DNA of 64,000 nucleotides, taken from contig NC_042997.1 of the NCBI RefSeq assembly GCF_006345805.1, forward strand, positions 100,874,001 through 100,938,000. Direction: 5' to 3'. Positions 8,515 to 29,690 of this stretch are shown piece by piece. The notes beneath the pieces were generated by a model, which saw only the letters and a program-made list of their open reading frames with translations, had not been told where the DNA came from and searched no databases. A program made the position numbers and the translations under genes. Position 1 is the first letter of the stretch. Each line of letters starts with the position of its first letter. The stretch comes from Octopus sinensis (lineage: Eukaryota).

Positions 8515-8588
<74 letters not shown>

Positions 8589-8589
8589 T

Positions 8590-10200
8590 ATATATCAATA
8601 CAATAAGATATTATAATGATATGTTAATATATTAAGATATATTAAATACATTATAATATAGGTGGTTCGTTAGCAATTAAAAACCAAAAAGGAATTAATA
8701 AATGATGCTGAAAACTAGCACCGGGAATTGCTAGAAATGAGAGTCAATTTTAACTCAGAAGCCACAAAAACACTAACCTCATGATATTTACGGGATTTGG
8801 ATATTTACAGGATTTCCCTTGTGAGATAAGCTCACAGAATGATATAGTTGGACAAAGCCTTATCACATAATTTAGAAATTTGATGAGAAGAATCTTGTTT
8901 CTTGTCAGAGGCCTCTACCAGTACTCAGGGTTAAAAAGATAGCCTGCCTCGTAATAATTCATTAGAAGAAAAAACCGTTGATAAGCAAGGGCTAAAATTC
9001 AAATGGTTAAAGTGTATATTATCAATGCAAAAAGATATTATAATAATATGTTAATATGTTAAGATATATTAAAACATCATAATATAGGTGGCTCGTTAGC
9101 AATTAAAAACCAAAAAGGAATTAATAAATGATGGTGCAAAATTGCACCGGCAATTGCTAGAAATGAGAGTCTATATTTAACTCAGAAAACCACTAAAAAC
9201 ACTAATCTCGTGATATTTACATATAAATCCTTCATTTTTGTATTTGGTTTGCAAGATTCTTCATGTGAATTTAACATTCAAGTAAGGACAAACACTAGTA
9301 ACAGTAGTGTAGAAATTGAGAAGAGCATAATGGAGAGCATCCAGCACATAGCTAACTTTATCCACCAAAATATCAAGGTAACTATAGATTACCCCACTAG
9401 GCACCCTAACAAGAGACTCCTTGAATTTTAGTTAGAGACTGTGAACAACTGAGTGCAGCTCCTCCACTTCTATTACATGAAATCCATAGCTTCTAAATAT
9501 GTTGTTCACAAGAACTCAGCTTTGTCACACAACATGAAAATCAACATACTGATTGTAGATTTAGTTAGGATAATGAATAACGTGTTCTTCGTATGCGAAT
9601 CCTATGAAACAAGGAAACATGTGCAGAACTTCATGCACTACATGCAACTCTCTGGATATGATCAGAAAGATAGGGTTTGGTGATACAGGGGAGCTAGAAA
9701 GAATTTAGATAGCATTATATGTAATGAAACCAATGGCACTTGTCCTAGATACAGAAGTAAAGACTGGAATAGGATACAAAGAGTTTGTGACGAAGCAAAC
9801 AGGGCGAACACATGGTACAAAGCTGACAAATCAAGGAATGATGTTTGTAGAGGCCACAGCCTATGGAGAACTAGCCCGTTGGTTTAGAAAAGCTCTGAAG
9901 GAGACCAAACTCAACATTAAGATCGTTGAAAAGCCTGGAGCGCCATCAGATTACAGTTACGTAGGACGTACCCCTTCGAGTATACCACATGCACCAGTGA
10001 GAACTGCATGGCATGTAAGATTAACCCTGGCATTAACTGTAGAACTGGAAATGTATTCTACAGCATAAGGAGCATAGAGGGTGCTTGTAAAGACAAGAAC
10101 ATGACATGCATTGGTAAGACATCTAGAAGAATTACGGAGAGATTAAATTAACATTTGAGACAATATGATGACACAAAAATACCTCTAAATGGATTATCTA
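8590..10200 (+). mobile_element. Degenerate Penelope-like element (RT thumb to GIY-YIG; possibly Naiad/Chlamys type)
   Basis: DYPTRHPNKRL, YMKSIASKYVVHKNSALS, MQLSGYD, MFVEATAYGELA..IKIVEKPG, CTSENCMAC...NCRTGNVFY...CIGKTSRRITERL; many stops and frameshifts. The 5' boundary is uncertain. Confidence 0.7.
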
Positions 10201-10542
10201 ATAACTCAAGTTTTAAAGACAGTAAACAGTGAAAAGCACTTAACATAATACAAAACCTTCTTTCTATAAGATCTATATCAATCTGTTGCTTTAAAATTTA
10301 TATATAATTATTACTTTTTAATTTAAGAAAATCTTTCTTTGAATATTGTGACTGTCTCAAGAAATATTTTTCTGAAAGTACAACACACACACACACATCA
10401 TCATCATCATCATTTAGCGCCCGTTTCTCATGCTGGCATCGGTTAGATGGTTTGATTTGAACTGGTAAGCCGGAGTGCCGCACCAGACTCCAGTTGTCTG
10501 TTTACCTGCATATCCATCTACCCACTTACCTACCTACACACA

Positions 10543-10580
<38 letters not shown>

Positions 10581-10600
10581 ACACACACACACACACCACA

Positions 10601-10647
<47 letters not shown>

Positions 10648-10765
10648 CACATACATATATATGTATACAGTTTTAAAATAGGATAAAATCTTTATAAGAA
10701 TTTATCAAGTAATTAGCGTGAAAAACCACAGGAGAAAAGTTTATTAATTATTCCCTTTAAATATT

Positions 10766-10918
10766 TTATTTATATTAAGGGCATTACTATACATAAATGC
10801 TTCACACTAGCAGGGACTCTTAAAGTTAAAACTACCATGTTTATTATGGTAGTTTTAACTTTAAGTGTCCCTCCTAGCGTGAAGCATTTATGTATAGTAA
10901 TGCCCTTAATATAAATAA
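10766..10918. repeat. Near-perfect hairpin, 73-bp arms, 7-nt loop
   Basis: 10766-10838 versus 10846-10918, 3 mismatches. Confidence 0.92.
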
Positions 10919-10946
10919 TATATAAATATATATATTATATATTATA

Positions 10947-11009
<63 letters not shown>

Positions 11010-11012
<3 letters not shown>

Positions 11013-11450
11013 TATATATATTTTGTCCTGTTCTGTAAATTTGCAAGTCTTACAACGAAGGTCTCCACATTTTGTTAACTGCATTATTTTGATGTGAATT
11101 TCGTCTTTGATAAGTTTTTTAAAGATATGATGGTTGTCTTTGGATGTCTATAATTTGTGACTCTAAGGCATCATTTGGCTGATAATGTGGTTTCTGAAAT
11201 TATGGGTAACTGCAACTGGAATATTTCTGTTTTTGTTTTTGCTGAGGCGAGTAACAGCTAATGAGGAAGTTACCATTTTGAAGAGAGTAGAAAATGCACC
11301 TTGAAAAACGTTAGCTTCATTTGGTTGGAATGAATGAATGAATGGGTTTTGCATGTGGCCATTGTGTGAATGTAATATGCAGTATTTAAAAAAGGCATTT
11401 TGGGAGCGATCTTTCTGTGGAATTGGAAGCAAAACAGGCTGTAGATGTAA
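11010..11450 (-). mobile_element. Degenerate Penelope-like element fragment
   Basis: Minus strand IIDIQRQP and LTKCGDLRCKTCKF, the Cys motif preceding the PLE GIY-YIG domain. Confidence 0.55.
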
Positions 11451-11937
11451 TGAATTTAATTCTGTTCATGATAGAATGTAAGAACGTTGTGAATGTGAAA
11501 CGTTGACTTTTTCAGACAAAATATGTATGCGTGCATGTATGTATGTATGTATGTATGTATGTATGTATGTATGTATGTATGTATGTATGTATGTATGTAT
11601 GTATGCATGCATGCATGCATGCATGCATGCATGTGTATATATATATATATGCATCTATGTATATCTCTTCTATTTTTAATTATTATAAATCTTCCACTGA
11701 GGAAGGAGCCGGTTTCCAACAAAGATGCAAGGCTCCGTCTTTGGAATGTAGTTAACACAGACAAATTCACATCTGGAACTCGAGAAAGTCATGCATATTT
11801 TTACTGTTCCACTCACAGATTGCACTTGTAATGTACGAATTAGTCGGTTGATTTCTCTTTCTGAAAATCCTATTCTCCTTTAAGCATTTACTTACAAAAC
11901 CTAGTGCTCTAATTATTATTGCTATGAATTAAGTATG

Positions 11938-11971
<34 letters not shown>

Positions 11972-12228
11972 TGTATGTATGTATGTATGTATGTATGTAT
12001 GTATGTATGTATGTATGTAGTAATATATTTACTATTTTGTTTATACACAAATTACACAATTACAATTACTTTTAAGGGATAAAAATGCTAAAAAAAGTTC
12101 TTAAATAGATTGTTGAAACAATTCTCACCTTTGATCACTGCTTAAATATTTGACTTAAAAATATCCTATCAATCACATAAACTGAAGATCATAGAATAAT
12201 TTATTCTACTTCCATCATATTATTTCAG

Positions 12229-12268
12229 AGACTAAAAACAGAAGGAACAGAAGAATCAGAAGGAAACA
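12229..12268 (+). CDS. ABCB1: ABCB (P-glycoprotein-like) linker exon, 40 nt, RLKTEGTEESEGN
   Basis: Acceptor tatttcag|AG and perfect donor ACA|gtaagt; purine-rich, acidic linker-like peptide; phase 0 in and phase 1 out fits the next exon. No homology-level support on its own. Confidence 0.65.
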
Positions 12269-12689
12269 GTAAGTAATATAATGAGGAAGCAATTTATCAT
12301 TGGTACATTTGTAGCCTAAGAAATTTCAACAAATCATTTCTTCTATAAACGAGCAAGACTTTCTCGATCCAAGTCAGCTTACACCACCATTATTCTCAGC
12401 TATTCAAGCATTTGTTCTCAAATATGTCATCTCTCTCTCTCCCTATCTCTTCATCTCTCTCCCTCTTCACACACGAGCTCGAGTGTGCGCACACAGACAG
12501 ACAGACAGACACACACACACATACACACACACGTACTTTATTTTAATAGAATTAATTTTCTGATGCCATAGATTTTGTACGAATATATTCTCACCAAAAA
12601 TATGGTTTTGAGTTGTTGAATTCTATAAAAAGTAACTATGTATCTACCTATGCAACATCGAGAACTAATTCTTTCAGTTTACCACCAAG

Positions 12690-12748
<59 letters not shown>

Positions 12749-12807
12749 CGACTACAGATGTTTAATGTATATGCTTTGTGAGTTTGCTCAGGGAAGGAAA
12801 GAAAAGT

Positions 12808-12844
12808 TGTTTTACGTTTCGAGCAAAGCTCTTCTTCAGAGACA
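12808..12844 (-). ncRNA. PLE-type minimal hammerhead ribozyme motif
   Basis: UGUCU-CUGAAGA-A-GAGC(uuu)GCUC-GAAA-C-GUA-AAACA; canonical core, one stem I mismatch. Confidence 0.6.
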
Positions 12845-13554
12845 GGAGACAGGAGATAGAGGAAAGTTCAAGAGGAAAGGAAAACGGAGGATGTAATTCA
12901 TGTAAATCAGGATGTAATTCAGTTACAGGTTATGTTAGCCTCATGAACGGATGGTGTCATCCAAGGAAATACTGGTTCAATATCTATTATTTTAGGGGGA
13001 ATTGATTTCCCTAAAATAATAGGTTTGTATATAAGCTGTAGTTTATATTCATTTAAATGAAGAAGAAAATGGAGATTTTAAAGTTAATAAGTGTTTATTA
13101 TCAGCAACAAATCGATCATTAACCCTTACAGCTGTTTCAATTATACACAGTGAAGTTAAATATCAAATTCATATTTCTGAACATAATCTCTTCAGAGGGG
13201 AAAAAATATACCCTTAGATGTTTTGTATGTTTGCTTGTAGATTCATCACAGCAGATTGAATGATACTTTTTATGCTTTATATTTATAAGTGTTTGGGCTA
13301 GGGGTTTGCAGGTTGGTTGGAGGTACGATACAGTAGGTAAATAGAATTAGAGTAATAAATGAAAGAATAAATAGAGATTATAGAGTAAATTACAATGTAA
13401 ATAAAGTACAATGTAGATAAGGTAAGGAAGTAAAGTACATTTATGAGTTGTATATAAAGTTGAGAAAGTTTGAATATATATAATTGCACACATACATACC
13501 TACACATGTTCATACATTCATCTGTACGTCATATATATATATATATATAATATA

Positions 13555-13583
<29 letters not shown>

Positions 13584-13585
<2 letters not shown>

Positions 13586-14001
13586 CTCTTTTACTCTTTT
13601 ACTTGTTTCAGTCATTTGACTGTGGCCATGCTGGAGCACCGCCAATAGTCGAGCAAATCGACCCCGAGACTTATTCATTGTAAGCCCAGTACTTATTCTA
13701 TTGGTCTCTTTTGCTGAACCGCTAAGTGACGGGGACGTAAACACACCAGCATCAGTTGTCAAGCGATGCTAGGGGACAAACACAGACACACAAACACATA
13801 CACACACACATATATACATATATATACATATATATACATATATACGACAGGCTTCTTTCAGTTTCCGTCTACCAAATCCACTCACAAGGCATTGGTCGGC
13901 CCGGGGCTATAGCAGAAGACACTTGCCCAAGATGCCACGCAGTGGAACTGAACCCGGAACCATGTGGTTGGTAAACAAGCTACTTACCACACAGCCACTC
14001 C
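13584..14001 (-). mobile_element. tRNA-derived SINE (abundant octopus-type family), CpG-intact copy
   Basis: Head GGAGTGGCTGTGTGGTAAG...GGTTCAGTTCC; internal (CA/TA)n; tail ...TGAAACAAGTAAAAGAGTAAAAGAGTA; homologous to 55447-55900 and 60525-60820. Confidence 0.85.
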
Positions 14002-14014
14002 ATATATATATGAT

Positions 14015-14462
14015 GGCCGTCCACTCGTGACCGAGGAAGACCATTGCCGATCTTCAGGAACATTGTGCGCTCTAGGACTAACTTATATTTTGCATTTGCG
14101 GCTCCGTTGGTGTCTAATGAGCCCTGCTCTTGACAAGCATACACGACTGCAAACATTGCAGACCAAGCTTTCCCCATTCACTATACGAGCCGTGCGCTTT
14201 CGCGCAGCTCGCTTAAGTTCTTCATGCTGGATACGTGCTCTCTCAAAAGTGTTGATCCCCTCCTTAACCTGCTTCTTCCATCTGTGGTGATGACAGGCAT
14301 TGTTCTCCCAGTCAGTGTCCTGCATATCAAAGGCCTTTAACGAGGATTTGACACAGTCCTTAAATCGCAGCCTTGGTTTCTGCCGGAGTCTCCTTCCATT
14401 CACAAGTTCTCCATAGAGCATCTGCTTAGGAATCCTTCTATCCTCCATTCTAATAAAAAAAC
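14015..14462 (-). mobile_element. RTE/BovB-like LINE, 5'-truncated 3' end
   Basis: RMEDRRIPKQMLYGEL..GRR...KPRLRFKD..K and C2H2 finger CNVCSRVCLSRAGLIRHQR. Confidence 0.9.
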
Positions 14463-14489
14463 CATATCTATATATATATATATATACAT

Positions 14490-14524
<35 letters not shown>

Positions 14525-14704
14525 CATGCACAGAGACATTCATATTTATTTACATGCATTTACACATACACGCATATCTCGTACACACATATTATCACAC
14601 ATATGTATATGTACACTTATGCACATACCTGCATATGCACAAATGCATTAATCTGTATTCACATTGACATACAAATCTAAGTATACATATATATACACAC
14701 ACAA

Positions 14705-15504
<800 letters not shown>

Positions 15505-15509
15505 AACTG

Positions 15510-16760
15510 ATGATATAACTGTAAATAAGTTAGGAGTTAGGCTAAAACCAATCTTAACAGTTTTGTAGTTTATTATTTCATTATATCTATTATCAGTGCT
15601 AAAGTATTTATGAATGACTTTAAATATAGATTTAACAATGTTATTTTAAATTTTATTGCATTTAGAATAATGAACCATATTTTATTAGATTTATCAAAGT
15701 GTTTGTTATTTATAGGTATGTTGTAATCCCTTTTAGAATTTTTAGAGCTAATGAAGTATATGGATTAGAAGTGGTGTTGGTATCGGAGTAGATTAATTGA
15801 TTATTCATATTAATTATGTTTATTAATTATGTTTTTATCATTGTAGAAATCCATATAATTGTAAATTGGTTGTTTTTTTATTTATTTATCTTGTATTGGT
15901 TTTTCTATTATTATGATTGGCACAATTATTTTGATTTGAAATGATCTTGGTTTTGTTATCATTGTTAATTCTTTGTTTATATGTAGTTGGGTTACTAGTT
16001 ATATGCTTATTGTTAATTATATTACTAGTTATGGTGGGATTATAAACTTTAACACTTTTTTTTTGCTTATAATTAGTTCTGTTATATTTATTAATGTTGC
16101 TAGGTTGACGGTATTCCATTTTATCCCTATATTCAACGTTTGCTAGAACAATGTGTTAGTGGTTTGCATACATATTAAATATTTCTACATTAAACAACAA
16201 ATAGGTTAATCTCTTACCAATGTTTGAGGCTAGTACATTTTAAATTGATCTTGGATGGTTACTTAGGAAGTTGATATAGCTTAAATTAGAATTAGGTTTT
16301 CTGAAAGGTTCATGCAATCTGGTTGTTAAACTGAAGTTAGCATCTAAGAAGTTAATTGAATTATTTTCCCTCTCGATGGAGATAGAAAGACCATGCCTTT
16401 TGAAAAACATAAAATTTTTTAAGTAGTTCTAATTTTCTATTGGATGCATTTTTTATGATGAAAAGTGCATCATCTCTATACAATCATTACCCAATTTCAG
16501 GAAAGCCATCATGCAGGTCGAATTGTACAAGGTCAGTCATTTGGGTGGAGTCTACGGCACCCATTATGATATCAAAGCAATTAGGAGTATCTTTTCTCGT
16601 CCAGAATTTGTTGTCAAAATTAACTATGGATTTATGGACCGCTAGTATAACGTTAATTCCATTCATGTTAAGGTTAGTATATTTCCTCGCAAAAAGAAGG
16701 GCATTATTTAGTAATGGGGTTGATAGAGGAACGTACGCATGTGTGGGAAACTATTAGTAG
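15510..16760 (-). mobile_element. Degenerate AT-rich Penelope-like element RT
   Basis: Minus strand FDIIMGAVDSTQMTDLV, LYRDDALF, INFLDANF, PFRKPNSNLSYINFLSNHP, KYFSTDNRYNEIINYKTVKIGFS. Confidence 0.8.
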
Positions 16761-17182
16761 CACAATGAGTACATATAGTTGAAACATTTAGTAATATATA
16801 TATATATAAATAATAAATTATATATATATATAATTTATTATTTACACACATATATATTATATATATAATATATATTATATATATATATATTATCTATCTA
16901 TATGTCTGTCTGTCTGTCTCTCTGTCTGTCTGGCCCCCTCTCTCTCCCCCTATCTATTTATCTAGAGCAACTGCCTTCAAAGACTCACATTATCATTCAA
17001 TGCACGAAATGAGGAGTAGATGGACAGCCGACAACTGATAAAGGGTCGTTCTTTATACTACTTGTCCTGTTTTCCATTTGTTTCTCTCGTTGTTTATGTA
17101 TTCAACTCTTTTGTTTTCGTATTTCATGTTGTTTACGGTTTGTGACGTCCTGTACCCATGCATGCATATATATATATATGTA

Positions 17183-17214
<32 letters not shown>

Positions 17215-17339
17215 CATATACACACACATATATATATGCATATATATGTATATATATATATATGATAAGTGTAGGTGGCATACGAGTGGGTATATATTTA
17301 TAAAAAAGAAGTTAGAAAACGCCATTATATAAGATAAAT

Positions 17340-17700
17340 TTTAATTTTCTTAGAGATTTTACGTTTCGGTTCTTCTTGAAATAACGAACCTTATCAAAAA
17401 TATTTTAAAAAGTTAAGTGTAATAAAAAAGTTCATAATTGTTTTTTACGAGTCTCAACAGAGTCCACGTGGTGGTGTTTTGTGGGGGGAGCATAATGGAT
17501 GTCTTGTGCGTTGACTAGATTCGTTGGCTGTTATTGAGAAAATGACCAGCGCCAAAATAGCAGTAGTAGCAGTGACTGCAATAAGTGCGTGAATTTGAGA
17601 GGGGATTATGTTAAATAAAATCCTAATTAACTGATCCTTCAGTTTTTTACTTTACTCAAACTCAGGACGTTTTCAGCACCCACTCATAGATAACGCTGTT
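17340..17700 (+). promoter_or_regulatory. Candidate internal promoter / alternative first exon (ATG 17542, donor after 17584)
   Basis: 11 CpG in 360 bp versus 4 in the next 1500 bp; E-box CACGTG 17465-17470; aaaATG ACC AGC ... ATA A|gtgcgt gives a phase-1 donor. Confidence 0.4.
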
Positions 17701-18447
17701 CTATCTACTCCTAAACTGACAAGATGGTTACTGCTGGAATGTGTTTGAACATGAAGCTGATTGATCAGCAGTGACCAGGAGGTGACAACAACACAAATGC
17801 TAGTAGAAATCATTTTCAAGGTGAACTATATATTGTGTACAATGAATGACTGCAGGTCCACTGTACTTGCTGGTATAGTCACATGCTTAACTAGTTTGGT
17901 GCACAGTTCTGTCATTTTAATTTCTATCCCAATTTGTGGAATCTCATCTTGAGCCAATCTAAACTTTGAGTGAGCTTTCTGCCATGCAGAAACTGTGAAG
18001 AAGTCTGTTGATAGAATGTAGTTGGCTTAAACATCATTTGGTTTAACTAAGCAGGGATTCTCTAGCAAAGTCCTGCCTGCTCCAGTCATTCAGATCAGGA
18101 TTTTGGTCAGACAGTAATCATGAATTGTGGTTTCTTCTTCTCTTTCTTACCAATCACTGATCCACATCATGTAAAAAAAAGTAAAAAACAAAAAAATTAA
18201 AATCATGTATGCATGCCCTCCCTCCTGAAATTAAGTCATGAAAAATCTGACCATCTCTGAATAAGCTCTTAAATTATACTTTCATCCTCTATCATGAGTC
18301 TTCCCCAATGACTTCAACTACTTTTTTTATTCTGGAGTGACCACTAGATGTTTAAGATTGGTGATCATTGTTCTTTCCTAAGCAATCGCTGGTAATAACA
18401 ACCAATTAATTTCATGGTAGTTGTATTCACATCTATTATAAGAATTA

Positions 18448-18662
18448 AGGCAGTGAGGAGGCAGAATTGTTAGCATGCTGGGGAAAAAAGCTTAGAGATA
18501 TTTTGTCTGTCTTTGTGTTCTGAGCTCAAATTCCGCTGAGGTCAGCTTTGCCTTTCATCTTTTAGGATTAATAAAATATGTACCATTTGAACACTGGGGT
18601 CAATGAAATCGACTTAACCCTTCCCCTGAAACTAGGGACCATGTGTTAAAATTTGAAACCAT
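18448..18662 (+). mobile_element. tRNA-derived SINE, CpG-decayed
   Basis: GGCAGTGAGGAGGCAGAATTGTTAGC...GAGCTCAAATTCC...TTTGCCTTTCATC; same family as 29474-29690. Confidence 0.8.
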
Positions 18663-21169
18663 TATAATAAGAATTATGATTCCAGTTTAAATTGAACTTC
18701 GTGTCTTGTCACTTTTTGGCATCATAATTTTAACCATGAAGCAAATATCTCTACAGAAAACAGTCTTAACTTTTTTTCATTGTGTTCTCAATGATCTGAA
18801 GGAAAGGAACACAAATGTCAGAATTGTCCATTGTCAAATCTGAAAATTTGTTTGACTATTTAATTATTCACACTTACAATGTGCCACTGATACTTATGCT
18901 GTCACCTTGCTGTCATCATGGGAGAATTGGTGCTTATGTTGTAAACATGGAGAAAGTTTTTATTCCAAAGCTGTTACACATCTAAACATCAGTTTTATTT
19001 TATTATTTTTACTATTAATAGGCTCATTTATATGTATGTGTTTATAATTACTCTGTAAACATTTTATAATTATTGTATTGTATTTATAAATATGTTTCTT
19101 TCTTGATTGGATGAACAAAAAATCTAATTAAGGGCACATTAGAGAGAACCTCTACAAGATATACCACTGGAGCTAATGTATTGTTGATTAACTAGCTAAA
19201 AATGATACATGTTGTCTATATATCGCCTGCCCCTGGCCAGATCCTAGCAGTGGATCTTTTCGCGGGCGCTTGTCAGCGTGCATTGGAGCGGTTCAACTTC
19301 TCCAGGCGCCAACGCCGCCTCAACATCTCCCCGGCTGAGCTCTTGGCTCTTCGTTCCCTCCAACGGCGCGCTGACATTATCATCAAACCGGCTGACAAGG
19401 GTGGAGCTGTAGTGGTGTGGGGCGCGGACCTCTATAGGGCCGAGGCTTTCCGCCAACTCATGACACCTCCTTCTATTCCCCTCTGCCCTCTAACCCCACA
19501 CGTAGCTACCAACAGACGGTATCCTCTACTTCCAAGACCTCATCTCGTCCTCCCGTCTCCCCCGCACCGCATCCAACCTAATTGTGCGAACCCCACGTAC
19601 CCCCACCATTTACTTTCTCCCCCCAAATCCACAAACCCAACAACCCTGGCCGCCCCATCGTCTCCGCCTGTAACTGCCCCACGGAGCTCATCTCTAAATA
19701 CCTCGACCGTGTCCTTGCCCCCCTAGTGGCATCTCTTCCCTCCCACATCCACGATACCAACCATGCTCTCCGGCTTTTCAACTCTTTCTCCTTTCCTCCC
19801 GGCTCCTCCAAAATCCTTTTTACTATGGACATCCAAAGCCTCTATACTGTTATCCCTCACCACGAAGGACTGCAGGCCCTTCGACACTTTCTTGACCTCC
19901 GCTCTAACCCTGTACCTGACACCTCCACACTCATTCGTCGGCCGAACTTGTCCTTACTCTGAACTGCTTCTCGTTCGCGGGCGAGTTCTACCATCAGGTC
20001 TCGGGAGTGGCCATGGGAACGCGAATGGGCCCCAACTATGCGAACCTGTTCGTTGGCTATGTTGAGGCCCAAATATTTTCTAATTTCACTGGTCCCACTC
20101 CTGAACTATATGGTCGTTACATTGACGACATTATCGGTGCCACCTCACTCTCCCGCGAACATCTAGATTCCTTCCTCTCTTTCGTCCAATCTTTCCATCC
20201 AGCCCTCCACTTCACTTCCACTATCTCCAACACCTCTGTCTCCTTCCTCGACATTTCGGTTAGCATTCTTCACTCCACTCTTACCACCTCCATTCACTAC
20301 AAACACACAGACTCACACTCATACCTCAACTTCTCTTCCTCCCACCCAGAACACACCAAGCTTTCCATCCCCTATCCCAATTCCTCCGTCTACGTAGGCT
20401 CTGTTTGTGACGACCATGACTTTGAGACTCAGTCTCAACGTATGGCTCACCACTTCACCCTACGTGGATACCCCCTCACCACTATCCACACCGCCCTTGC
20501 CAGAGCACGGTCCGTGGACCGTGTATCTGCTCTCTCTCCCCGAACCCGCCCTGTAGTCTCTCCGCCTCCCTTTTTCCCCCTCCTTACCACCCCACGACCC
20601 TACGTCTCCAACGCACACATTCTTCGAGCTTTCCGTCATCTCCAGTCCGACCCGTCCACTTCACACCTCTTCCCTAACCGACCCCTCCCCTCTTTCAAAC
20701 GAGCCCACAACCTTCGAGACCTTTTGGTCCATAGCTCCTTCCCTGACCCTACCTCCCAACCCGGCTCGTTCCCCTGCTCCCGCCCACGTTGCCGCACTTG
20801 CCCTTACCTCTCCAACACCACCCGCCTCACTAGCACCCACCATCGACCCTATCCCATCATCCACTCCTTCACCTGCACCTCCAGCAATATTATCTATTGC
20901 ATCTCTTGCTCTCTCTGCAATTCCTTGTACATCGGACAAACGGGACGCCGCTTGGCTGACCGGTTGCGCAGAACACCTTCGTGACATCCACCTTGCGAAC
21001 GACACACCGGTCTCACGCCATTTCCGCTCCACCGGTCACTCCTTGCAACACCTATCTGTGTTCGGTTTGTCCTTACACAGAGGCCATCCAGATTCCCGTT
21101 CGCCGTGAACAGGAATTAATCTTCTTCTCTTCGCTCTTATACGCGCCATTTGGTCTCAACTCTCCCCCC

Positions 21170-21845
21170 TCCTCATCTAACCCCCCTCTCCTCCCCCCCC
21201 TCCTCACCTATCCTTTCCCCCCGACCCCTACTTCTTCAGTCCTTCATCCTTTCAGCCCCTACTCCCCTTCCCTTCTTCCTCTTTTCTCTCCTCCCTCCCT
21301 CTTCCCCTTCCCTCTGCTCCCTCTCTCCCCTTCTCTCTCTCTTCCCTCTCCCTCTTTCCTCCTTCATCCCCCTCCTCCCCCATCCTCTCCTCTTCCCCCC
21401 TCTCCTCCCCCTCTTCTTCCCCTCCCCTTCTCCCCCCCTCTTCTTCTCCCCCTCTCCCTCTTCTCCTCACTACACCACATGACTTTACACATCACATCAC
21501 ATATGATGTGCCATACTAATACACAACACCAACTAATACATACTAATACGTACTAATACATACTAGTACATACTAATACATACACCAACCCTATACACAC
21601 ACACGTCCAGACCCCGCATACGCACTTATACTCTCTCATACACACACACACACACTTATACATACCAATACGTACTAATACATACTAATACATACTAATA
21701 CATACACCAACCCCATACATACGCACGTCCAGACCAATCCTACGCCTAATACTCTCTCTCATACACACACACCACACACCCCTTATACATACTAATACAT
21801 ACACCAACCCTATACATACACACATCCAGACCCCCTACGCACTAT
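21170..21845 (+). repeat. ~300-bp almost pure C/T tract followed by ~3 imperfect ~100-120-bp tandem units containing CATACTAATA
   Basis: Read directly. Confidence 0.85.
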
Positions 21846-22015
21846 TAGCTGGTCCCTCAACCCTTTTATCAACCCTATTATCTCCCCTTATTTCGCTCTC
21901 GCGTCTCATGTTGATCCTTGACCTCTGGCCGAAATCAGATCGCCATGTTGATTCGTTAGCTACTGCACGCATTTTTTTTTCTCTCCTTCTTTCTGTGTTT
22001 TTCTCTCTCTGTGTA

Positions 22016-22053
22016 TCTTTCTGTTGAAGAGCGTAGGCTCGAAACGTTAAAGA
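22016..22053 (+). ncRNA. Hammerhead-like motif with variant core CUGUUGA in the 3' region of a PLE
   Basis: UCUUU-CUGUUGA-A-GAGC(guag)GCUC-GAAA-C-GUU-AAAGA; 5-bp stem I. Confidence 0.5.
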
Positions 22054-22247
22054 CTTGTTTTATTTATATTTCCTGAGCGCCATACTAATACAATTGTTCG
22101 TTTGTTTTCCACCTGCCTTCGTCTTTTGTTTATTTTCATAAAGCTTCCCGTTATATAAAACATTGTATTGATCTAGTTTCATTCTTCAGAAAAAAACTAA
22201 ATTTTCCATTGGTGTACATAACTTTCTGCTCTCAATTTATTTGAAAC

Positions 22248-22421
22248 AAATAAATTCATGACATTTGTCAATGAAACAGATCAATATGTTAGAATTAGCT
22301 TTTATATAACATAAAAAAAAGAAATTATCTACAATAAAATTATTTTAGATCATTTCTTTTTTTATGTTATATAATTCTAACATATTGATCTGTTTCATTG
22401 ATGAATGTTATGAATTTATTT
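22248..22421. repeat. AT-rich foldback hairpin, ~77-84-bp arms, 14-nt loop
   Basis: Arms match apart from a few substitutions and a ~7-nt bulge; a related single arm lies near 27125-27170. Confidence 0.85.
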
Positions 22422-22711
22422 CTTCTGAGGATCTTGAACATGAAAATTCATACTCAAGTTTCTCAGAAGAAATAAATTTAGATAACTATATAAACTTTCT
22501 GCTGTTTTAAACATGTATCTGGTAAATTAACAAGGCAAAATCTTTGGTAGAATAAAACAGTATTAAATGGTAAAATTTACTATATTGTATTTTGTCAGTA
22601 TATATTATTACTATTATTGTTTTGTTTCTGCAGCTAAGGGATGCGATTTTTCTTTTGTTGAATCTATGTACAACAATAAATTAAATACAAATTTAATTAT
22701 TTGCAATACAG

Positions 22712-22812
22712 CAACTGATGATGAAGTATCATCATCCCAACGACAGAGATTAAAATCAATAAGTTCTGTACATGACGGAGAGACACATGACGAGGCATCA
22801 GCAGTTGAAGAG
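22712..22812 (+). CDS. ABCB1: ABCB linker exon, 101 nt, (T)TDDEVSSSQRQRLKSISSVHDGETHDEASAVEE
   Basis: ttgcaatacag|CA acceptor, GAG|gtaggg donor; phase 1 in, 0 out; S/R/acidic composition typical of the P-gp linker (RLKSIS resembles a kinase site). Confidence 0.8.
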
Positions 22813-23305
22813 GTAGGGCATATTTTTTAACCACTTCTATTTATGGCTATGATTTCCAAATATTTTTCACATTATATCCATCCCTCTGGATATGGAAACG
22901 ATATCTCACCTCCATTTGATTCAAATTTATTTTCTGGGTGGATGAAAGATCAAAAAGAAGAACCATATTATGTCACAAAGAAAATATTGCACTTTCAGAT
23001 TTGAATAATATTTTTATATATCAAAACTACAATTCACTGCTTTCATTTGCCTTCACATATTCCTCTTCTTGAAAATTTCCCTATCTACTATTGGGAAGAA
23101 GGATATTTGTTAGGTACCACTGAATGTGTTACTCCTTATGGCACACTTATTTTCATGACTTTTATTAACGATTTGTTTTACTGAGAGGAAGACTCATTTG
23201 TTTCCTTGCTCTCTGGTTTTCTGTTTATCAATATGTTAACCCATTTTTTGAAGCCTATTCATTTATGACACTATACTTCACCATTCTGAATTATATTTCC
23301 TGGGA

Positions 23306-23460
23306 TAGGCATAGACATGGCTCTGCAATTAAAAAGTGAAAATAAGAACCATGTGATTTTAGGTTCACTTTTACTGCATGGCACCTTGGGTTAGCTGGTG
23401 TCTTCTGCTAGACTTTATGAGGTGGATTTGGTAGCTGGAAACTTAAAAAAGAGGCCCGTC
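23306..23460 (+). mobile_element. Degenerate SINE 5' part
   Basis: GGTTCAC...TGCATGGCACCTTGGG...GTGTCTTCTGCTA...GGATTTGGTAG, similar to the family at 13584. Confidence 0.55.
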
Positions 23461-23488
23461 CTTCTTTCCTATAAGTGTGTGTGTGTGT

Positions 23489-23529
<41 letters not shown>

Positions 23530-24004
23530 ATTTAGATCAGTACTTGCTTATTCCAAAGTCATGATGTTCAAATGGTGTTTTTGTTGGAACTTCTCCAGTC
23601 ATTAACAAGTCTGTTTGCTTTGTATCTTTGAAGCTATGTTAATTAAGAAATCTCTCACTTGGAAAGAAGTTAAAGGCCAGTATGAAGAAGGGAATCTGAC
23701 TGTATGAGAATGCCTCAATAACATATTCTTCAAATCAATGCAAACATGGGAAATAGGGTGATGACTTTTTCAAGTCGAGTAAGGCCAAAATACCAGAAGG
23801 TGAACTTTATGTTATAATGACAAAAAATCATAATCATTTCTTTCTTTGACACAAAAAACTGATGACAATATATTTGACAACATTTTTGCTACGAACATGT
23901 GTTTATTGTTCAAGTAATAAGACGTACTGTTATGCATTGTTAATGTAATAAGTGAAGCCTAATACAACAGCAGTTTTCAAAGATCCTTGTTGGTTAAAAC
24001 AAAT

Positions 24005-24480
24005 CACAGAGTTAATTTTTCAGAAGATCTGCAATCTAATTCCTCCATTAATTTTACTGCATGTTCAGCACATATGTTTGAACACTGAACATCTTGAATT
24101 ACTGATTCTTTAAGATTCCAATTAACTTTCAAACAGTTGCTTGCTTTAGAATATCCAGAAACTTCTGAAAGTTTCTGGTAGGCCATGCTGTCAAAACTTT
24201 GGTAACAAAACTACATTTCCATCCAGTTTCTGCTGATAAAACAACACATGTTGTAGAATTTTTCTCTACTTTGTGGTAGAAGTATGTATGTGAGGATGGC
24301 CAAGATTGCTTGTGAATTCCAAAGCACATTTAAGTAAATATTGGCAGCTCAATTCCCTGAAAATCCAGCATCATTGAAAGGTATAAGGCATTAGCGAAAG
24401 TTAAAAATCCAGACATGCAAAAAATCAGCTCAGGAACTAGAGAATCTATATAAAAAAAAATTTGATTTTACCATGTATAA
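24005..24480 (-). mobile_element. Possible DNA-transposon-derived fragment
   Basis: Minus ORF ...CSNICAEHAVKLMEE resembles the VNDxAERxVKL transposase-like motif. Confidence 0.3.
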
Positions 24481-26001
24481 CATTAAAGTCTATTGTAAGA
24501 AATGTAAACACTCTGTTGACAAGGTACGATACCTATTTGAAACGACTGAAACCAGGTCAAAATTTTGAAGATTTGTTTGACATTACTAATCAACATGGTA
24601 TCTGGGATTATCTCAACAACAAATAATGTTACTGAAGATGTGAAACAACTTTTACTACTGTATAGATCGTTATTGGCATTTGGTCAGGAAGTAACTTCAG
24701 TCATAAACTCCTTTAACTCTAATAGAATAGAATGAAGCACTAATGCCGAACGTAATGTGAGTTTGACTAAGACAATGCAAGTGTGACGCATTTGAAAATG
24801 GAAATATTAGTTGGTTGGGGAGGTTTTTGAAAGTTTGGAAAAAATGAACTGCTAGTCACTGTTTTCTCATTATTTCTCATAGCAAGTCACTCTGGCCATG
24901 TTGAATTTCAGAGAAAAATTAAAAAAAGACATTACCCTAATTGGGAAAAAATAAAGGAATTAAAATGAATGACAGAATTGTTGAATCAGCTCAACAGGGA
25001 TTTTTCATCTGGAGCTTGCCACATCATGCACCTTCAATACTGGTTTCTTTTTAAAGTCATTGATCGTATTATATCTTAGCCTGAAAACGTTATGATGACT
25101 ATGCCTTTTCCAAAGACATAAGCGATGAACTAGGTGCAGTGTATATATAATCATAAAATAAAAAGTTTTAGGTTTTGGTTAAGGAAAATTTACAGGTTGA
25201 TTGTTATATATATGGACAATATTTTATATATGTTTTACATATATTTACAATTCAAAATGGCCACCCTTTGTTTCCACCATAGCTCTTAATTTTTTCTCAA
25301 CTGTTTTATCACTTCACAATTCTTTAAACTAGCCATTTCCAGTGAATGCTTACAATTTGTTTATGTTTTGTTTGAGCTGCCATACTTACTTAAAAGTAAA
25401 CAATAAAGCAAAAGAATGTTAGGAAGCGTAATACAACATTTGCAGCTATTTTTGCAAATAAGAATATTTCAATTTATGTTTGAATGAATGGAAAATTATT
25501 AAGTTTAAATAATGGGTAAATGTAAATGCCACATCTGGTAAAAAAAATTGTGAGGCGATAAAACAATTAAATGTTTGCAGAATAACTATTTTTAATATGT
25601 AGAAAAAGTTTCCAATGGTACAAATAAAACCAAATCCAATTCGGGAAGAAACTATTCAGTTCATATCAGGAGAATCATTGAAGCCATTGTTAAGAGAGTG
25701 AGCAGAAATCCATGAAGTGATTCTCTCTACAATTTCATCTGAAAACCGAAAAATAAACAACCACATCATCGAAATTTTTAATCTATGAGATAATCGATGA
25801 TTAATTCATGACAATGTGAATAAACATTACATTTGATGGAGTAATTTAAATGTTAAAGAGTTAAACAATAAGTTAGAGTTGTTTACTTTATGTTCTGTGA
25901 AGTTACCTCTTGTTCTACACCAGTTAGCTAGATAATAAGTTAAATCTACTTCATCTTTGAAGTTTAACAATTGTTGCATTTTTTTGTTCTTTTAACTCCA
26001 G

Positions 26002-26148
26002 GAAAAAGATCTCCCTGAAGCGAGTGCAATTCGAATTTTTAAAATGAACTCACCAGAATGGCCTTATATCCTCATGGGGTTGCTTGCTTCTGCAGTAAAT
26101 GGTGCTGTTATACCTGCATTTTCAGTAATTTTTAGTGAATTCATAGGC
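26002..26148 (+). CDS. ABCB1: ABCB exon, TM7 (EKDLPEASAIRIFKMNSPEWPYILMGLLASAVNGAVIPAFSVIFSEFIG)
   Basis: 147 nt, ccag|GAA ... GGC|gtaagt; aligns ungapped by eye to human ABCB1 D689-G737 (LNxPEWPY, NGxxxPAF). Confidence 0.95.
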
Positions 26149-26379
26149 GTAAGTAAAATTGAGTTGATTGATGTTTTAAATCCTTTTCTACAATGGGCAC
26201 AAGGTATAAAATTTTGGGGGCTGGGTCCAATTGATTACATCAACCCCAGTGCTCAACTGATACCCCCCAAAAATGAATTTAGAATGTAAAACAAGAAGAC
26301 ATGTCATGAAGCATTTTGTTTGGTATGAATTTAAAAGTACTAAATTTCTCACAAGACTTACAAACCAAAGTAATTATAA

Positions 26380-26538
26380 GCACAGGCTTGGCTGTCACAT
26401 GGTTTCAGGTTCAATCCCCCTGCATGACATCTTAAGCAAGTCTCTTTTGCCATAGCCCTAGAACTACCAATGCCTTGTCAGCAAATTTGGTACACTGAAA
26501 CTATGTAGAAGGCCTTGTATATATATGTGTGAGTGTGT

Positions 26539-26576
<38 letters not shown>

Positions 26577-26762
26577 CACTATTTGACAACTGGTGTTTAT
26601 GCCCTTGTAATTTAGCAGTTCAATAAAAATGATCAACAGAATAAGTATCAAACTTCAAAAATGAATACCGAGATCAATTTGTTCAATTAAACCCTTCAAG
26701 ACAGTGCTCCAGTATGGCCTCAGTCCAATGACTGAAACAAGTAAAAAATAAAAGGTAAAAGA
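26380..26762 (+). mobile_element. Degenerate SINE (same family as 13584, opposite orientation)
   Basis: GGTTCAATCCC B box, internal (GT)n, tail CAATGACTGAAACAAGTAAAA. Confidence 0.7.
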
Positions 26763-28665
26763 AGATATTAAAATGTTTTTTTGGAAGATTGACAAATTTT
26801 TTAATATCTCAAATGTAGATTCATTAAGATTCTCCTAATTTATCAGCATAAGGAGTTGCATAAGTTTTCTTAATATTTCATCAGGATATATTTAGGAAAG
26901 TAAACTTCTACAAATAAAACAAAATGTGGTGTTATTGAAATATATAACCTTGTTACATCAGTATATTATCATAGTTTAATCTATTATATAATCTAGTCAC
27001 CAATAAGTCTCTTAACAAAAGACTTATGTAATAAAAAATTTGTGATTACAATGACACATTCATTTCTGAAAACTTCCATTGATAACTGCTGGGAAGCATT
27101 TCTTAAAATAATATACTGATTTTAATGTTTTCATCAATGAAACAAATGAATATGTTAGAAAGTACATTTTATAACAAAATCTCTGTTTCAAATTGTACAA
27201 AGGCAGCCACAAGTAAATATTGATAACTTGATTTTTTTATGCCCTTTTCGTCACTGTTTGTAATGAAATCCGCCCAATTATTTAGTGGAATACAATATGT
27301 CAGTTATTTTGGTGTAAAATTTGTGATTCTTCATGTGCTACATCAGAAAATAGAATAAAAGTCTTGTTTTTGTAGTGGCCTCAATTCAATCAGATCCTTT
27401 CATTTGCAAAAAACAAAAAAACAAAAGCTTCACTGGTTGTTTAAAAGATTACAACCTCCCCACCTTGGTGTGTTTCTATAAGCTATGTATGATCCTGCTT
27501 TCTTTATTTTACTGTGTGGGTGCCATGTAAAAAGTACTCAGTCCACTCTGCAGTTTGGTTGGTGTTGGGAAGGGCATCCAGCTGTTATAACCATGCCAAA
27601 ACAGACACAGAAGTATGGTGCAGTCTTCTGCCTGGCCAGCTCCTGTCAAACCATCCAATCCATGCCATCATGGAAGGAGGATGTTAAATGATGATGATGA
27701 TGATGATGATGATGATAAATCTAGCATGTTTCAAAAAGAGCCAACCTCTGAATCAGGGGAAATGTTGTTGCCTCTTGTTAAAAAAATGCTGTGATGCTAT
27801 ATGTTTCGAATTTCAAAGGAACACTTTCTAAAATAAATAAGGAAAAAAATTAATTCTTCAAGCATTTTAAAATATCCATATCCACTTTACAGAGTGTGTT
27901 AAAAAGGACCCAGCACATTTTGTAAAGTGTTGGACATTAGGAAGGGCATCCAACCATAAAAAAAAAAAAACATGCCGAAACAAACAATTGAGGTCTGGAC
28001 AGCTCTCCAGCTGGTAAGCTCCTGTCAAACCATCCAACCCATACCAGCATGGAAAATGGGCATTAAACAATGCTGCTGATGATGATTTACTGTAGAGGCA
28101 AAATAGTTGAGCAACAGTTGCTGAGGTTAATAAGTACACAATCTTTTGTCAACATTTCCTTCGATTATTTTGATATTCTTATCAAAGAAAGGTTGATCTT
28201 GCAGAGTTTGTCTGAAAAATACTGACTTCATAGGGACAATTAATGGTGTTGACACTTCATTATACCATTGGATATGAGTACTAGTAACCTGTTTCTTGGA
28301 TTAGTTGTGTACTTTATTAAATAGGTCATCCCTTCCTACTTTACAGGATTACATTAACAAAATTCCTATATTTGAGGTGTTGTAATTCAGTAGAAATATT
28401 GTTGTTGTTGCTGGGAAAACAATCTATGACAGAGATAATGCTTAGAATGTAACTCTGATTCAATGGGTCATTATATAAAAGTATGTAGTGTACGCTAACT
28501 GAAGTCAATAATCTTCATATAGTATGACAGTGTCAAATCACACATTTTAGTACTTTGTGATATCCTGTCTATTAATTTCAACGTTAGGGTATATACTTTT
28601 GTTTCATCCTGATTCATTGCATTAAGCCGCTGTCTGTCTCCCCAAACCCCCCTCTCTCTCTCTAC

Positions 28666-28725
<60 letters not shown>

Positions 28726-29473: not shown

Positions 29474-29690
29474 AGGCGGCGAGCTGGCAGATTTGTTAGC
29501 ATGCCAGGCGATATGCTTAGCAGTATTTCGTCTCTCCGTTAGGTTTTGAGTTCGAATTCCACTGAAGTCAACTTTGCCTTTCATCCTTTTGGGATCGATA
29601 AAATTAGTACCAGTTAAGTACTGGAGTCAATGTAATTGACTTAATCCCTTCCTCCAAAATTTGAGGCCTTGTGCTTCCAGTAGAAAGGAT
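29474..29690 (+). mobile_element. tRNA-derived SINE
   Basis: GGCGGCGAGCTGGCAG...GAGTTCGAATTCC...TTTGCCTTTCATCCTTT...AGTACCAG. Confidence 0.85.

What the first reader, a model, noticed from the sequence alone, without database searches (positions are those of the whole stretch)
17340..19200. Sharp CpG boundary at ~17.7 kb with an in-phase ATG exon: candidate internal promoter for a half-transporter (TMD2-NBD2) ABCB isoform
Seen: 11 CpG in 17341-17700 but only 4 in 17701-19200. By eye the window stays CpG-rich upstream and CpG-poor downstream, apart from young TEs. Copies of one SINE family keep their CpGs at 13.6 kb and have lost many or most at 55.5 and 60.5 kb. At the boundary lie an E-box (CACGTG 17465) and aaaATG-MTSAKIAVVAVTAI-A|gtgcgt (17542-17584), a phase-1 donor that matches the phase-1 acceptor at 22712 and gives an open frame into TMD2-NBD2. 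Established: invertebrate gene-body methylation depletes CpG downstream of active TSSs, and half ABC transporters work as dimers. Inference: a germline-active or broadly active promoter sits inside the linker intron and makes a TMD2-NBD2 half P-gp. Alternative: 17519-17584 (ag|AT...A|gt, 66 nt, phase 1-1, no stop) is a cassette exon of the linker.
Basis: partly seen in the sequence, partly recalled or inferred. Interest (0 to 1): 0.72.

Follow-up and report, generated by a model that had tools for sequence, protein, structure and literature searches.

The report
CpG step inside octopus ABCB1 gene
A sharp drop in CpG content really does occur at 17.7 kb inside an intron of an octopus multidrug-pump gene, but it looks like the edge of an ordinary methylated gene-body domain, and nothing testable here supports a hidden promoter making a half-size pump.

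Summary
CpG o/e is 0.74 for 1-17,700 and 0.27 for 22,151-64,000. With the young retroelement at 19.2-22.15 kb masked, the maximum-likelihood change point falls at 17,700. Locally, o/e drops from 1.03 (17,001-17,700) to 0.04 (17,701-18,400), where TpG/CpA is in excess.

The window carries the 3' part of Octopus sinensis ABCB1-like (XP_029635962.1, 1262 aa, a 146-kb gene). The step lies in the 10.4-kb linker intron between exons 12229-12268 and 22712-22812.

The promoter and half-transporter inference is not supported by anything testable here:
- The ATG exon's donor is weaker than all 12 real donors in the window, and 8 other ATG-to-phase-1-donor candidates in the same intron have donors at least as good.
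- The alternative cassette exon is one of 393 open candidates in that intron.
- None of the seven annotated models from four octopod species has a half-size isoform or the insert.
- There is no GC or CpG peak relative to the upstream flank.
- A 5'-unmethylated, 3'-methylated gene-body pattern is already described for 6,545 O. bimaculoides transcripts.

Most likely this is the edge of a domain methylated in the germline over evolutionary time. What sets the edge is unknown. An internal germline TSS remains possible (about 0.15).

The parts
1..17700 (.). CpG-retaining side (o/e 0.74). It is heterogeneous: 1-7800 is 0.89, 7801-13600 is 0.44 and 13601-17700 is 0.80.
12229..12268 (+). Linker micro-exon (RLKTEGTEESEGN) with a phase-1 donor ACA|GTAAGT. 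It is present in the annotated O. sinensis, O. vulgaris and O. bimaculoides proteins.
12269..22711 (+). Linker intron (10,443 nt) that contains the CpG step.
13584..14014 (+). SINE copy on the CpG-retaining side. It keeps 12 of 14 CpG-type sites.
16036..16735 (-). Degenerate, 5'-truncated Penelope-like retroelement fragment (RT region with a YRDD motif).
17001..17700 (.). Undepleted block abutting the step (20 CpG, o/e 1.03, GC 0.34). No repeat match or coding remnant was found.
17465..17470 (.). CACGTG E-box, one of six in the window.
17542..17584 (+). Judged a chance ORF.
17694..18387 (.). The step itself: the last CpG of the retaining side to the first CpG of the depleted side, a 693-bp CpG-free gap.
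17701..19195 (.). Strongly depleted intron DNA (4 CpG, o/e 0.09, TG/CA o/e 1.38). It includes an old SINE-like repeat at 18405-18681.
19196..22150 (+). Young GC-rich Penelope-like retroelement carrying an RT (o/e 0.90). It hides the step unless masked.
22712..22812 (+). Second linker exon with a phase-1 acceptor.
22151..64000 (.). CpG-depleted domain (o/e 0.27-0.28) covering all TMD2 and NBD2 exons in the window. Exon o/e is 0.36.
26002..61284 (+). TMD2 and NBD2 exons: 26002-26148, 33674-33763, 36701-36778, 38483-38566, 40554-40757, 49713-49813, 53409-53549, 55162-55318, 58240-58437, 61078-61284. Together with exon 22712-22812 they encode 503 aa, 100% identical to XP_029635962.1.
55446..55898 (+). 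SINE copy on the depleted side. It keeps 6 of 14 CpG-type sites.
60525..60831 (+). Older SINE copy on the depleted side with essentially all family CpGs lost.

Best explanation
The step at about 17.70 kb is the 5' edge of a gene-body domain that has been methylated in the germline over evolutionary time. The domain covers roughly the last 40% of a 146-kb ABCB1-like full-transporter gene of Octopus sinensis, meaning all TMD2 and NBD2 exons and their introns.

Downstream of the edge, 5-methylcytosine deamination has turned CpG into TpG/CpA in introns, exons and most resident repeats. Upstream of it, the intron DNA has stayed largely unmethylated and keeps its CpGs. This is the '5' part unmethylated, 3' part methylated' gene class already described by bisulfite sequencing in O. 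bimaculoides.

The gene's product is the annotated full-length transporter, made through the 12268>22712 junction. The ATG 'exon' at 17542-17584 and the E-box are chance sequence features.

Shown here: the CpG step, its position, the TpG/CpA signature, the gene model, and the chance level of the exon. Inferred: that methylation caused the depletion, and that no protein-coding isoform starts here. Unknown: what fixes the edge at this spot.
For: - CpG statistics and change points.
- TG/CA o/e is 1.44 just right of the step and 1.03-1.20 just left of it.
- Downstream exons are also depleted, o/e 0.36.
- The SINE copy at 55.5 kb lost twice as many CpGs as the 13.6-kb copy although it has fewer derived non-CpG changes.
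- The old PLE fragment at 16.0-16.7 kb, which carries stops and frameshifts, still has 10 CpGs.
- The gene is full length in all annotations, and the window exons are 100% identical to XP_029635962.1.
- Macchi et al. 2022 (PMC9476566): methylation pattern MP 3 comprises 6,545 transcripts unmethylated in the first third and methylated toward the 3' end and the transcription termination site. The pattern is the same across tissues.
- The candidate exons are at chance level.
- No half-size isoform is present in the protein databases.
Against: - No methylation data were examined, so depletion is only a footprint.
- The 5' 80 kb or so of the gene could not be retrieved. Whether the whole 5' part is CpG-rich, as MP 3 would predict, is therefore unknown.
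- The unmethylated part would reach about 60% of the gene, more than the 'first third' in the published description.
- The edge is very sharp and sits in apparently unique DNA, which a gradual 5'-to-3' methylation gradient does not predict.
- One TE pair shows equal CpG retention on both sides, and several non-depleted patches exist inside the depleted domain.
- The absence of an annotated isoform is weak evidence, because annotation pipelines miss rare or germline-only transcripts.
Confidence: 0.6

Rival explanations
1. Reader's hypothesis. A promoter active in the germline or broadly sits at about 17.0-17.6 kb in the linker intron. Transcription from it, coupled to H3K36me3- and DNMT-dependent gene-body methylation, created the depleted domain downstream. 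The transcript encodes a TMD2-NBD2 half transporter, starting either at the MTSAK ATG or, from a non-coding first exon, at a downstream Met such as the one in KMNSPEW.
For: - The step coincides with a fully undepleted 700-bp block followed immediately by fully depleted DNA, as expected just downstream of a TSS.
- The depleted domain matches exactly the part of the gene that would form a complete TMD-NBD unit.
- The frame from 17542 through 22712 is open.
- Full ABCB genes that also make half-size isoforms are known: ABCB5beta from a second promoter (PMC10828454). Half-size vertebrate ABCB1/4 models and cDNAs also appeared.
Against: - The donor is weaker than all 12 real donors, and the exon is one of 9 such candidates in the intron.
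- No annotated or assembled isoform exists in four species.
- There is no GC or CpG peak relative to the upstream flank.
- The only half-size octopus model found (P0001) is a truncated model of a full-length paralog.
- The same methylation geometry is shared by thousands of octopus genes.
- The E-box count is unremarkable.
Confidence: 0.15
2. Repeat-mosaic artefact. The left side is CpG-rich mainly because it is packed with later-inserted or intrinsically unmethylated repeats: a SINE, a LINE tail, a Penelope-like fragment and microsatellites. The sharp step is simply the right edge of such an insertion block lying against old intron DNA. On this view it is not a regulated chromatin boundary.
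For: - The upstream side contains recognisable TE pieces right up to 16.74 kb, and 19% of it is tandem repeat.
- Octopus transposons are reported to be largely unmethylated (PMC9476566).
- The oldest-looking upstream segment, around the micro-exon (7.8-13.6 kb), is itself half depleted at 0.44, with a 505-bp CpG-free stretch at the exon.
- A step sharp to within 100 bp is what an insertion edge gives.
- Young TEs inside the depleted domain are also CpG-rich.
Against: - 17.26-18.40 kb matched no repeat in the window or in 47 kb of another octopus locus, and no PLE homology extends right of 16,740.
- The 13.6-kb SINE is not younger than the 55.5-kb copy by non-CpG changes, yet it keeps twice the CpGs.
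- The degenerate PLE fragment is old but still CpG-bearing.
- Many TEs in the downstream domain are strongly depleted, for example the LINE at 47.4-49.4 kb (o/e 0.08-0.26) and the SINE at 60.5 kb.
Confidence: 0.15
3. The depleted domain is the footprint of a different germline transcription unit, one that runs antisense or overlaps from downstream. Candidates are a convergent neighbour or a long non-coding RNA on the minus strand ending near 17.7 kb.
For: The depleted domain runs to the window end and may continue past the gene. MP 2 and MP 3 genes are also methylated beyond their transcription termination site.
Against: No non-TE coding ORF on the minus strand between 23 and 64 kb. No Rfam or tRNA genes. 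No strand-skew signal either way.
Confidence: 0.05
4. Assembly join or recent structural rearrangement that brought DNA from two differently methylated regions together at 17.7 kb.
For: The step is abrupt.
Against: - There is no N run in the window.
- Exons on both sides (12229-12268 and 22712 onward) belong to one protein that is conserved in order in O. sinensis, O. vulgaris and O. bimaculoides.
Confidence: 0.03

Closest known systems
Octopus gene-body methylation pattern 'MP 3' (Macchi et al. 2022, BMC Biol 20:202, PMC9476566)
   Same: The 5' portion of the transcription unit is unmethylated and the 3' portion is methylated through to the termination site. The pattern is constant across tissues, so it is expected to leave a CpG-depletion footprint. 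Here o/e is 0.74 against 0.27 along one gene.
   Different: The published description is a metaplot ('first third' unmethylated). Here the edge lies at about 60% of the gene (my estimate from the 146-kb gene span) and is sharp to under 100 bp. Methylation itself was not measured, and the ortholog's MP class could not be looked up.
ABCB5 full-length and ABCB5beta (human)
   Same: One ABCB full-transporter gene also yields a half-type isoform from a second, internal promoter. The half form must dimerise (PMC10828454).
   Different: ABCB5beta is supported by cDNA and protein evidence, and its start lies within the first half of the gene rather than in the linker intron. For the octopus gene there is no transcript or annotation evidence at all.
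ABCB1/P-glycoprotein-type full transporters (MDR/TAP subfamily B)
   Same: The window exons are 100% identical to O. sinensis ABCB1-like, a 1262-aa protein with two ABC_membrane and two ABC_tran domains. A charged linker is encoded by two small exons.
   Different: Nothing unusual. The introns are very long (146-kb gene), as is typical for octopus.
Transcription-defined methylation domains from alternative or oocyte-specific promoters in mammals (established knowledge, not tested here)
   Same: In that system methylation begins downstream of whichever TSS is used in the germline. That is the logic behind reading a CpG step as a TSS footprint.
   Different: It was shown in mammals with DNMT3A/3L. 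Whether octopus gene-body methylation follows germline TSS use is unknown.

Membership tests
ABCB full transporter (P-gp/MDR type) | A single polypeptide with TMD1-NBD1-linker-TMD2-NBD2 | tested here: met
   P0121 is 1262 aa with two PF00664 and two PF00005 domains. The 503 aa encoded from 22712 onward, plus the micro-exon, are identical to it.
ABCB full transporter (P-gp/MDR type) | NBD motifs (Walker A, Q-loop) in the window exons | tested here: met
   GKSGCGKS at 58363-58386 and VSQEP at 61141-61155. The signature motif and Walker B of NBD2 lie beyond the window end but are present in P0121.
Internal-promoter half-transporter isoform (ABCB5beta-like) | Transcript 5' ends mapping inside the gene | not testable with these tools
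   No CAGE or RNA-seq access. The protein collections hold no transcript-derived fragment of this region.
Internal-promoter half-transporter isoform (ABCB5beta-like) | An annotated or assembled protein that starts in the linker intron | tested here: not met
   A 399-aa query starting with MTSAK found no near-identical protein under 700 aa; the best hit was a 52% paralog. A 153-aa query found nothing. All seven octopod models are full length or joined canonically at the linker.
Internal-promoter half-transporter isoform (ABCB5beta-like) | A first exon whose splice signal stands out from chance | tested here: not met
   The donor scores 4.76, below all 12 real donors, and 9 candidates score at least as well in the intron.
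Internal-promoter half-transporter isoform (ABCB5beta-like) | An open frame giving a complete TMD plus NBD downstream | tested here: met
   The frame is open from 17542 via 22712 through 61284. The C-terminal 113 aa lie outside the window but are present in P0121.
Historical germline gene-body methylation domain (invertebrate mosaic methylation) | CpG depletion with a reciprocal TpG/CpA excess | tested here: met
   Just right of the step, CpG o/e is 0.04-0.09 with TG/CA o/e 1.38-1.44. Just left of it, CpG o/e is 0.99-1.03 with TG/CA o/e 1.03-1.20.
Historical germline gene-body methylation domain (invertebrate mosaic methylation) | Depletion covers the exons and introns of a transcription unit | tested here: met
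   Introns are at 0.27 and exons at 0.36 over 42 kb.
Historical germline gene-body methylation domain (invertebrate mosaic methylation) | Same-family repeats lose CpG faster inside the domain, independent of their age | tested here: inconclusive
   The SINE pair says yes: 12 of 14 sites kept against 6 of 14. The TE pair 968/37448 says no: 9 of 10 against 9 of 10. The tandem duplicate shows no CpG changes.
Historical germline gene-body methylation domain (invertebrate mosaic methylation) | 5mC actually present in the germline | not testable with these tools
   No bisulfite data. The supplement of PMC9476566 holds no entry searchable by gene name.
CpG-island-type promoter | A local GC and CpG peak relative to both flanks | tested here: not met
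   GC is 0.34-0.36 against a background of 0.33. Of upstream 360-bp windows, 19% have at least 11 CpG. The contrast exists only toward the right flank.

The most novel reading that the evidence does not exclude
The step marks a real promoter, active in the germline, in the linker intron of an octopus P-glycoprotein gene. Its transcript yields a TMD2-NBD2 half transporter, and its use in the germline is what confines gene-body methylation to the 3' 40% of the gene. By extension, the thousands of '3'-methylated' (MP 3) octopus genes would be footprints of unannotated internal germline TSSs. CpG steps could then be used to map those TSSs from sequence alone.
Probability: 0.12. Interest if true: 0.6.

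Novelty: new member of a known kind. Interest (0 to 1): 0.27.

Why it matters
As it stands, this is a clean single-locus example of a known feature of octopus genomes: gene bodies methylated only in their 3' part, visible as a CpG-depletion footprint. It matters mainly as a caution. A CpG step plus an in-phase ATG and GT inside a 10-kb AT-rich intron is not evidence for an alternative first exon, because such ATG/GT combinations occur by chance about nine times in this intron alone.

If an internal germline TSS were shown here, two things would follow. It would give the first half-size P-gp isoform in a mollusc. It would also suggest a sequence-only way to find germline promoters in species with mosaic methylation.

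Tried and rejected
- Cross-species test of the 17.0-17.7 kb block and a CpG profile of the 5' half of the gene. The orthologous genes are 146 kb (O. sinensis), 130 kb (O. bimaculoides) and 163 and 108 kb (Argonauta). All exceed the 100-kb limit for DNA retrieval.
- Transcript evidence through the protein collections. A short linker and TMD2 query returned nothing at all, so it says nothing about expression.
- The half-size O. bimaculoides paralog P0001 as a precedent. Rejected: its first exon is open upstream of the annotated ATG, and an older 657-aa model carries the NBD1 tail and linker. Its locus L001 is 19% N and shows a different CpG pattern.
- Transcription-associated strand skews across the step. 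They are dominated by TE noise and uninformative.
- CpG decay between the 2-kb tandem duplicates at 43-47 kb. There are 0 CpG changes among 24 substitutions, too few sites to use.
- Whether the undepleted block is the 5' end of the minus-strand Penelope-like element. The RT homology stops at 16,735. A profile of PLE N-termini found nothing to the right, although that test has low power.
- Pfam on ORFs from 7.5 to 21 kb gave only a weak RVT_1 hit in the retroelement at 19.9-21 kb. The PLE relatives themselves have no Pfam hit.
- Rfam and tRNA scans of the window found nothing.
- A search of the methylome paper's supplements for the ABCB ortholog's methylation class gave no hits by name.
- The E-box as a promoter cue was rejected: 6 sites in 64 kb, and the motif contains a CpG, so it tracks CpG content.
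Full report
**What is in the window.**
The + strand carries the 3' part of an ABCB1-like full ABC transporter. Translated searches with ABCB homologs located TMD2 and NBD2 exons from 26.0 to 61.3 kb. I refined them to eleven exons with canonical ag/gt borders and one continuous frame. The exons are 22712-22812, 26002-26148, 33674-33763, 36701-36778, 38483-38566, 40554-40757, 49713-49813, 53409-53549, 55162-55318, 58240-58437 and 61078-61284.

The 503 residues they encode are 100% identical to Octopus sinensis XP_029635962.1 (P0121, 1262 aa). They differ at three positions from the O. vulgaris protein, so the window is O. sinensis or very close to it. That protein also contains RLKTEGTEESEGN, encoded by the 40-nt micro-exon 12229-12268. 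The intron 12269-22711 is the 'linker intron'.

No NBD1 exon lies in 1-12,207. The gene spans 146 kb. By my estimate the window starts about 70 kb into it.

**The observation.**
The counts are exact: 11 CpG in 17341-17700 and 4 in 17701-19200.
- Over the window, CpG o/e is 0.73-0.74 for 1-17,700 and 0.27-0.28 for 22,151-64,000.
- The GC-rich retroelement at 19,196-22,150 has o/e 0.90 and hides the step. Unmasked, the best single change point is its right end (22,150). Masked, the best is 17,700 (LLR 84.9), and the likelihood falls by about 9 units within 2 kb to the left and 10 units within 1 kb to the right.
- An optimal multi-segment partition places breaks at 17,700, 19,200 and 22,200 at two of three penalties.
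- Masking all tandem repeats leaves 0.74 against 0.27.
- Locally the change is abrupt. 17,001-17,700 has 20 CpG (o/e 1.03, TG/CA o/e 1.20). 17,701-18,400 has 1 CpG (o/e 0.04, TG/CA o/e 1.44).
- The gap 17,694-18,387 exceeds every CpG-free gap upstream.

The step is real, well localised and far beyond chance.

Two qualifications apply. The left side is a mosaic: 0.89 for 1-7.8 kb, 0.44 for 7.8-13.6 kb and 0.80 for 13.6-17.7 kb. A 505-bp CpG-free stretch lies right around the micro-exon. The right side also contains small non-depleted patches at 30.9-31.3, 37-38 and 42-43 kb.

**Is it methylation-type decay rather than repeat age?**
The evidence for decay:
- TpG/CpA excess accompanies the CpG loss.
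- Exons in the depleted domain are also depleted, o/e 0.36.
At 14 sites where either copy has CpG and the other has CG, TG or CA, the 13.6-kb copy keeps 12 and the 55.5-kb copy keeps 6. Polarised non-CpG changes number 12 in the 13.6-kb copy and 6 in the 55.5-kb copy, so the CpG-rich copy is not the younger one. The 60.5-kb copy has lost essentially all.
- A degenerate Penelope-like fragment with stop codons at 16.04-16.74 kb still holds 10 CpGs.

Against a simple two-domain picture, the TE pair 968-1358 and 37448-37848 keeps 9 of 10 sites on both sides. The 2-kb tandem duplicates at 43-47 kb show no CpG changes.

On balance, historical methylation of the 3' domain is the best reading, with local exceptions.

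**The promoter and half-transporter inference.**
The sequence cues offered are at chance level.
- On a generic donor matrix, TAA|GTGCGT scores 4.76. That is below all twelve genuine donors of this gene in the window (4.96-13.10).
- The same 10.4-kb intron contains 9 ATG-initiated, stop-free, phase-1 donor candidates scoring at least that well, and 150 candidates if any GT is allowed.
- The cassette alternative (17519-17584) is one of 393 open phase 1-1 AG..GT candidates of 30-200 nt. Its pyrimidine tract (0.61) ties the weakest real acceptors.
- It would insert a hydrophobic 22-mer into an otherwise acidic linker.
- No annotated protein has it. O. sinensis, O. vulgaris, three O. bimaculoides models and two Argonauta paralogs all join the micro-exon-type sequence directly to the next linker exon.
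- The E-box is one of six CACGTG sites in the window.
- The 360-bp block is not an island relative to its left flank. Of upstream windows, 19% have at least 11 CpG, and GC equals the background.

Database tests were negative.
- The homolog search lists only hits up to about 1.75 times the query length (compare). The 399-aa query beginning with MTSAKIAVVAVTAI would therefore have surfaced any half-size isoform of about 630 aa. The best hit was a 52%-identical paralog.
- A 153-aa query spanning the MTSAK peptide, linker and start of TMD2 found nothing. There are thus no transcript-derived fragments either, which means expression could not be assessed at all.
- The one half-size octopus model found (P0001, 573 aa) is a truncated model. 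Its first exon stays open upstream of the annotated ATG, and an older 657-aa model includes the NBD1 tail and linker.

**What is known.**
Bisulfite data for O. bimaculoides (PMC9476566) show the following:
- Fewer than 10% of CpGs are methylated, and they are clustered on the bodies of a subset of genes.
- Four stable patterns exist. One of them (MP 3, 6,545 transcripts) is unmethylated in the first third and methylated toward the 3' end and the transcription termination site.
- The patterns are identical across brain regions and in the hatchling.

A constant pattern of that kind should leave exactly the footprint seen here. The geometry is therefore a common, described one and does not by itself need a locus-specific promoter. 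What sets the internal edge in MP 3 genes is not explained in that paper.

ABCB5 and ABCB5beta show that a full ABCB gene can also produce a half-type isoform from a second promoter (PMC10828454).

**Rivals.**
- A repeat-mosaic or TE-edge explanation has some support. The left side is repeat-rich, octopus TEs are mostly unmethylated, and the step is very sharp. However, 17.26-18.40 kb matched no repeat available to me, and the PLE homology stops at 16,735.
- Antisense or overlapping transcription has no support from ORFs, RNA families or strand skews.
- An assembly join is unlikely, because exons on both sides belong to one conserved protein and there are no Ns.

**Verdict.**
The CpG step is real and sharp, and the gene model is correct. 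The step is most likely the edge of a gene-body domain methylated in the germline over evolutionary time, in a gene that is methylated only in its 3' part (confidence about 0.6). The ATG exon and the cassette exon are chance features. An internal germline TSS near 17.0-17.7 kb is not excluded (about 0.15). Use of the MTSAK start codon for a translated half transporter is unlikely, which I put at a few percent.

The locus is an instance of a known kind of feature, so interest is low to moderate. Junction and 5'-end data, a methylome, and the CpG profile of the whole gene in three octopod genomes would settle it.

Noticed in passing
window 19196-22150 (+): GC-rich (52%) retroelement with frameshifted RT ORFs and a GIY-YIG-like tail, so it looks Penelope-like. 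CpG o/e is 0.90 and the + strand is strongly C-rich (GC skew -0.51). It sits 1.5 kb right of the CpG step and shifts the naive change point to 22.15 kb.
   Followed up: partly
window 16036-16735 (-), possibly to 15502: Degenerate, 5'-truncated fragment of a second Penelope-like family. tblastn to 600-800 aa proteins gives E values down to 1e-43. One relative read in full (P0256) has YRDD plus a C-terminal GIY-YIG-like motif, and five relatives scanned have no Pfam hit. The family has 158 relatives among the representative proteins.
   Followed up: yes
window 30901-31300: CpG-rich patch (o/e 1.68) inside the depleted domain. It coincides with a near-perfect inverted repeat, 31021-31125 against 31201-31306 (98% identity, about 75-bp spacer). 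Each arm carries a CACGTG site (31089, 31232). It could be a young MITE-like insertion or an unmethylated intragenic element.
   Followed up: no
window 37448-38204 and 968-1358: A TE copy inside the depleted domain keeps 9 of 10 CpG-type sites, the same as its relative on the CpG-rich side, despite 17.7% non-CpG divergence. This is a local non-depleted patch (o/e about 0.7) in the gene body.
   Followed up: partly
window 43038-45081 / 45018-47032: A 2-kb tandem duplication at 97% identity. Of 24 substitutions, 23 are transitions and none is at a CpG. All 14 CpGs are shared.
   Followed up: partly
window 11845-12350: The longest CpG-free stretch on the 'CpG-rich' side (505 bp) surrounds the linker micro-exon 12229-12268. 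The whole 7.8-13.6 kb segment is half depleted (o/e 0.44).
   Followed up: partly
L001 (O. bimaculoides CM046601.1:87318892-87376858, reversed): The paralog annotated as a 573-aa 'ABCB4-like' half-size protein is a truncated model of a full-length-type gene. An older 657-aa model has the NBD1 tail and linker. The locus is 19% N, and its CpG o/e runs the other way: low in the TMD part and high in the NBD part.
   Followed up: partly
tool behaviour: the search for homologous proteins appears to list only proteins up to about 1.75 times the query length. A 399-aa query missed the 1262-aa exact match, which a doubled 1006-aa query then found.
   Followed up: yes
window 18405-18681 and 6+ other sites (29450, 41867, 44494, 46442, 50058, 62496): A second SINE-like family of about 250 bp. 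All its copies in the window lie on the depleted side, and it is also present in the O. bimaculoides locus L001.
   Followed up: no
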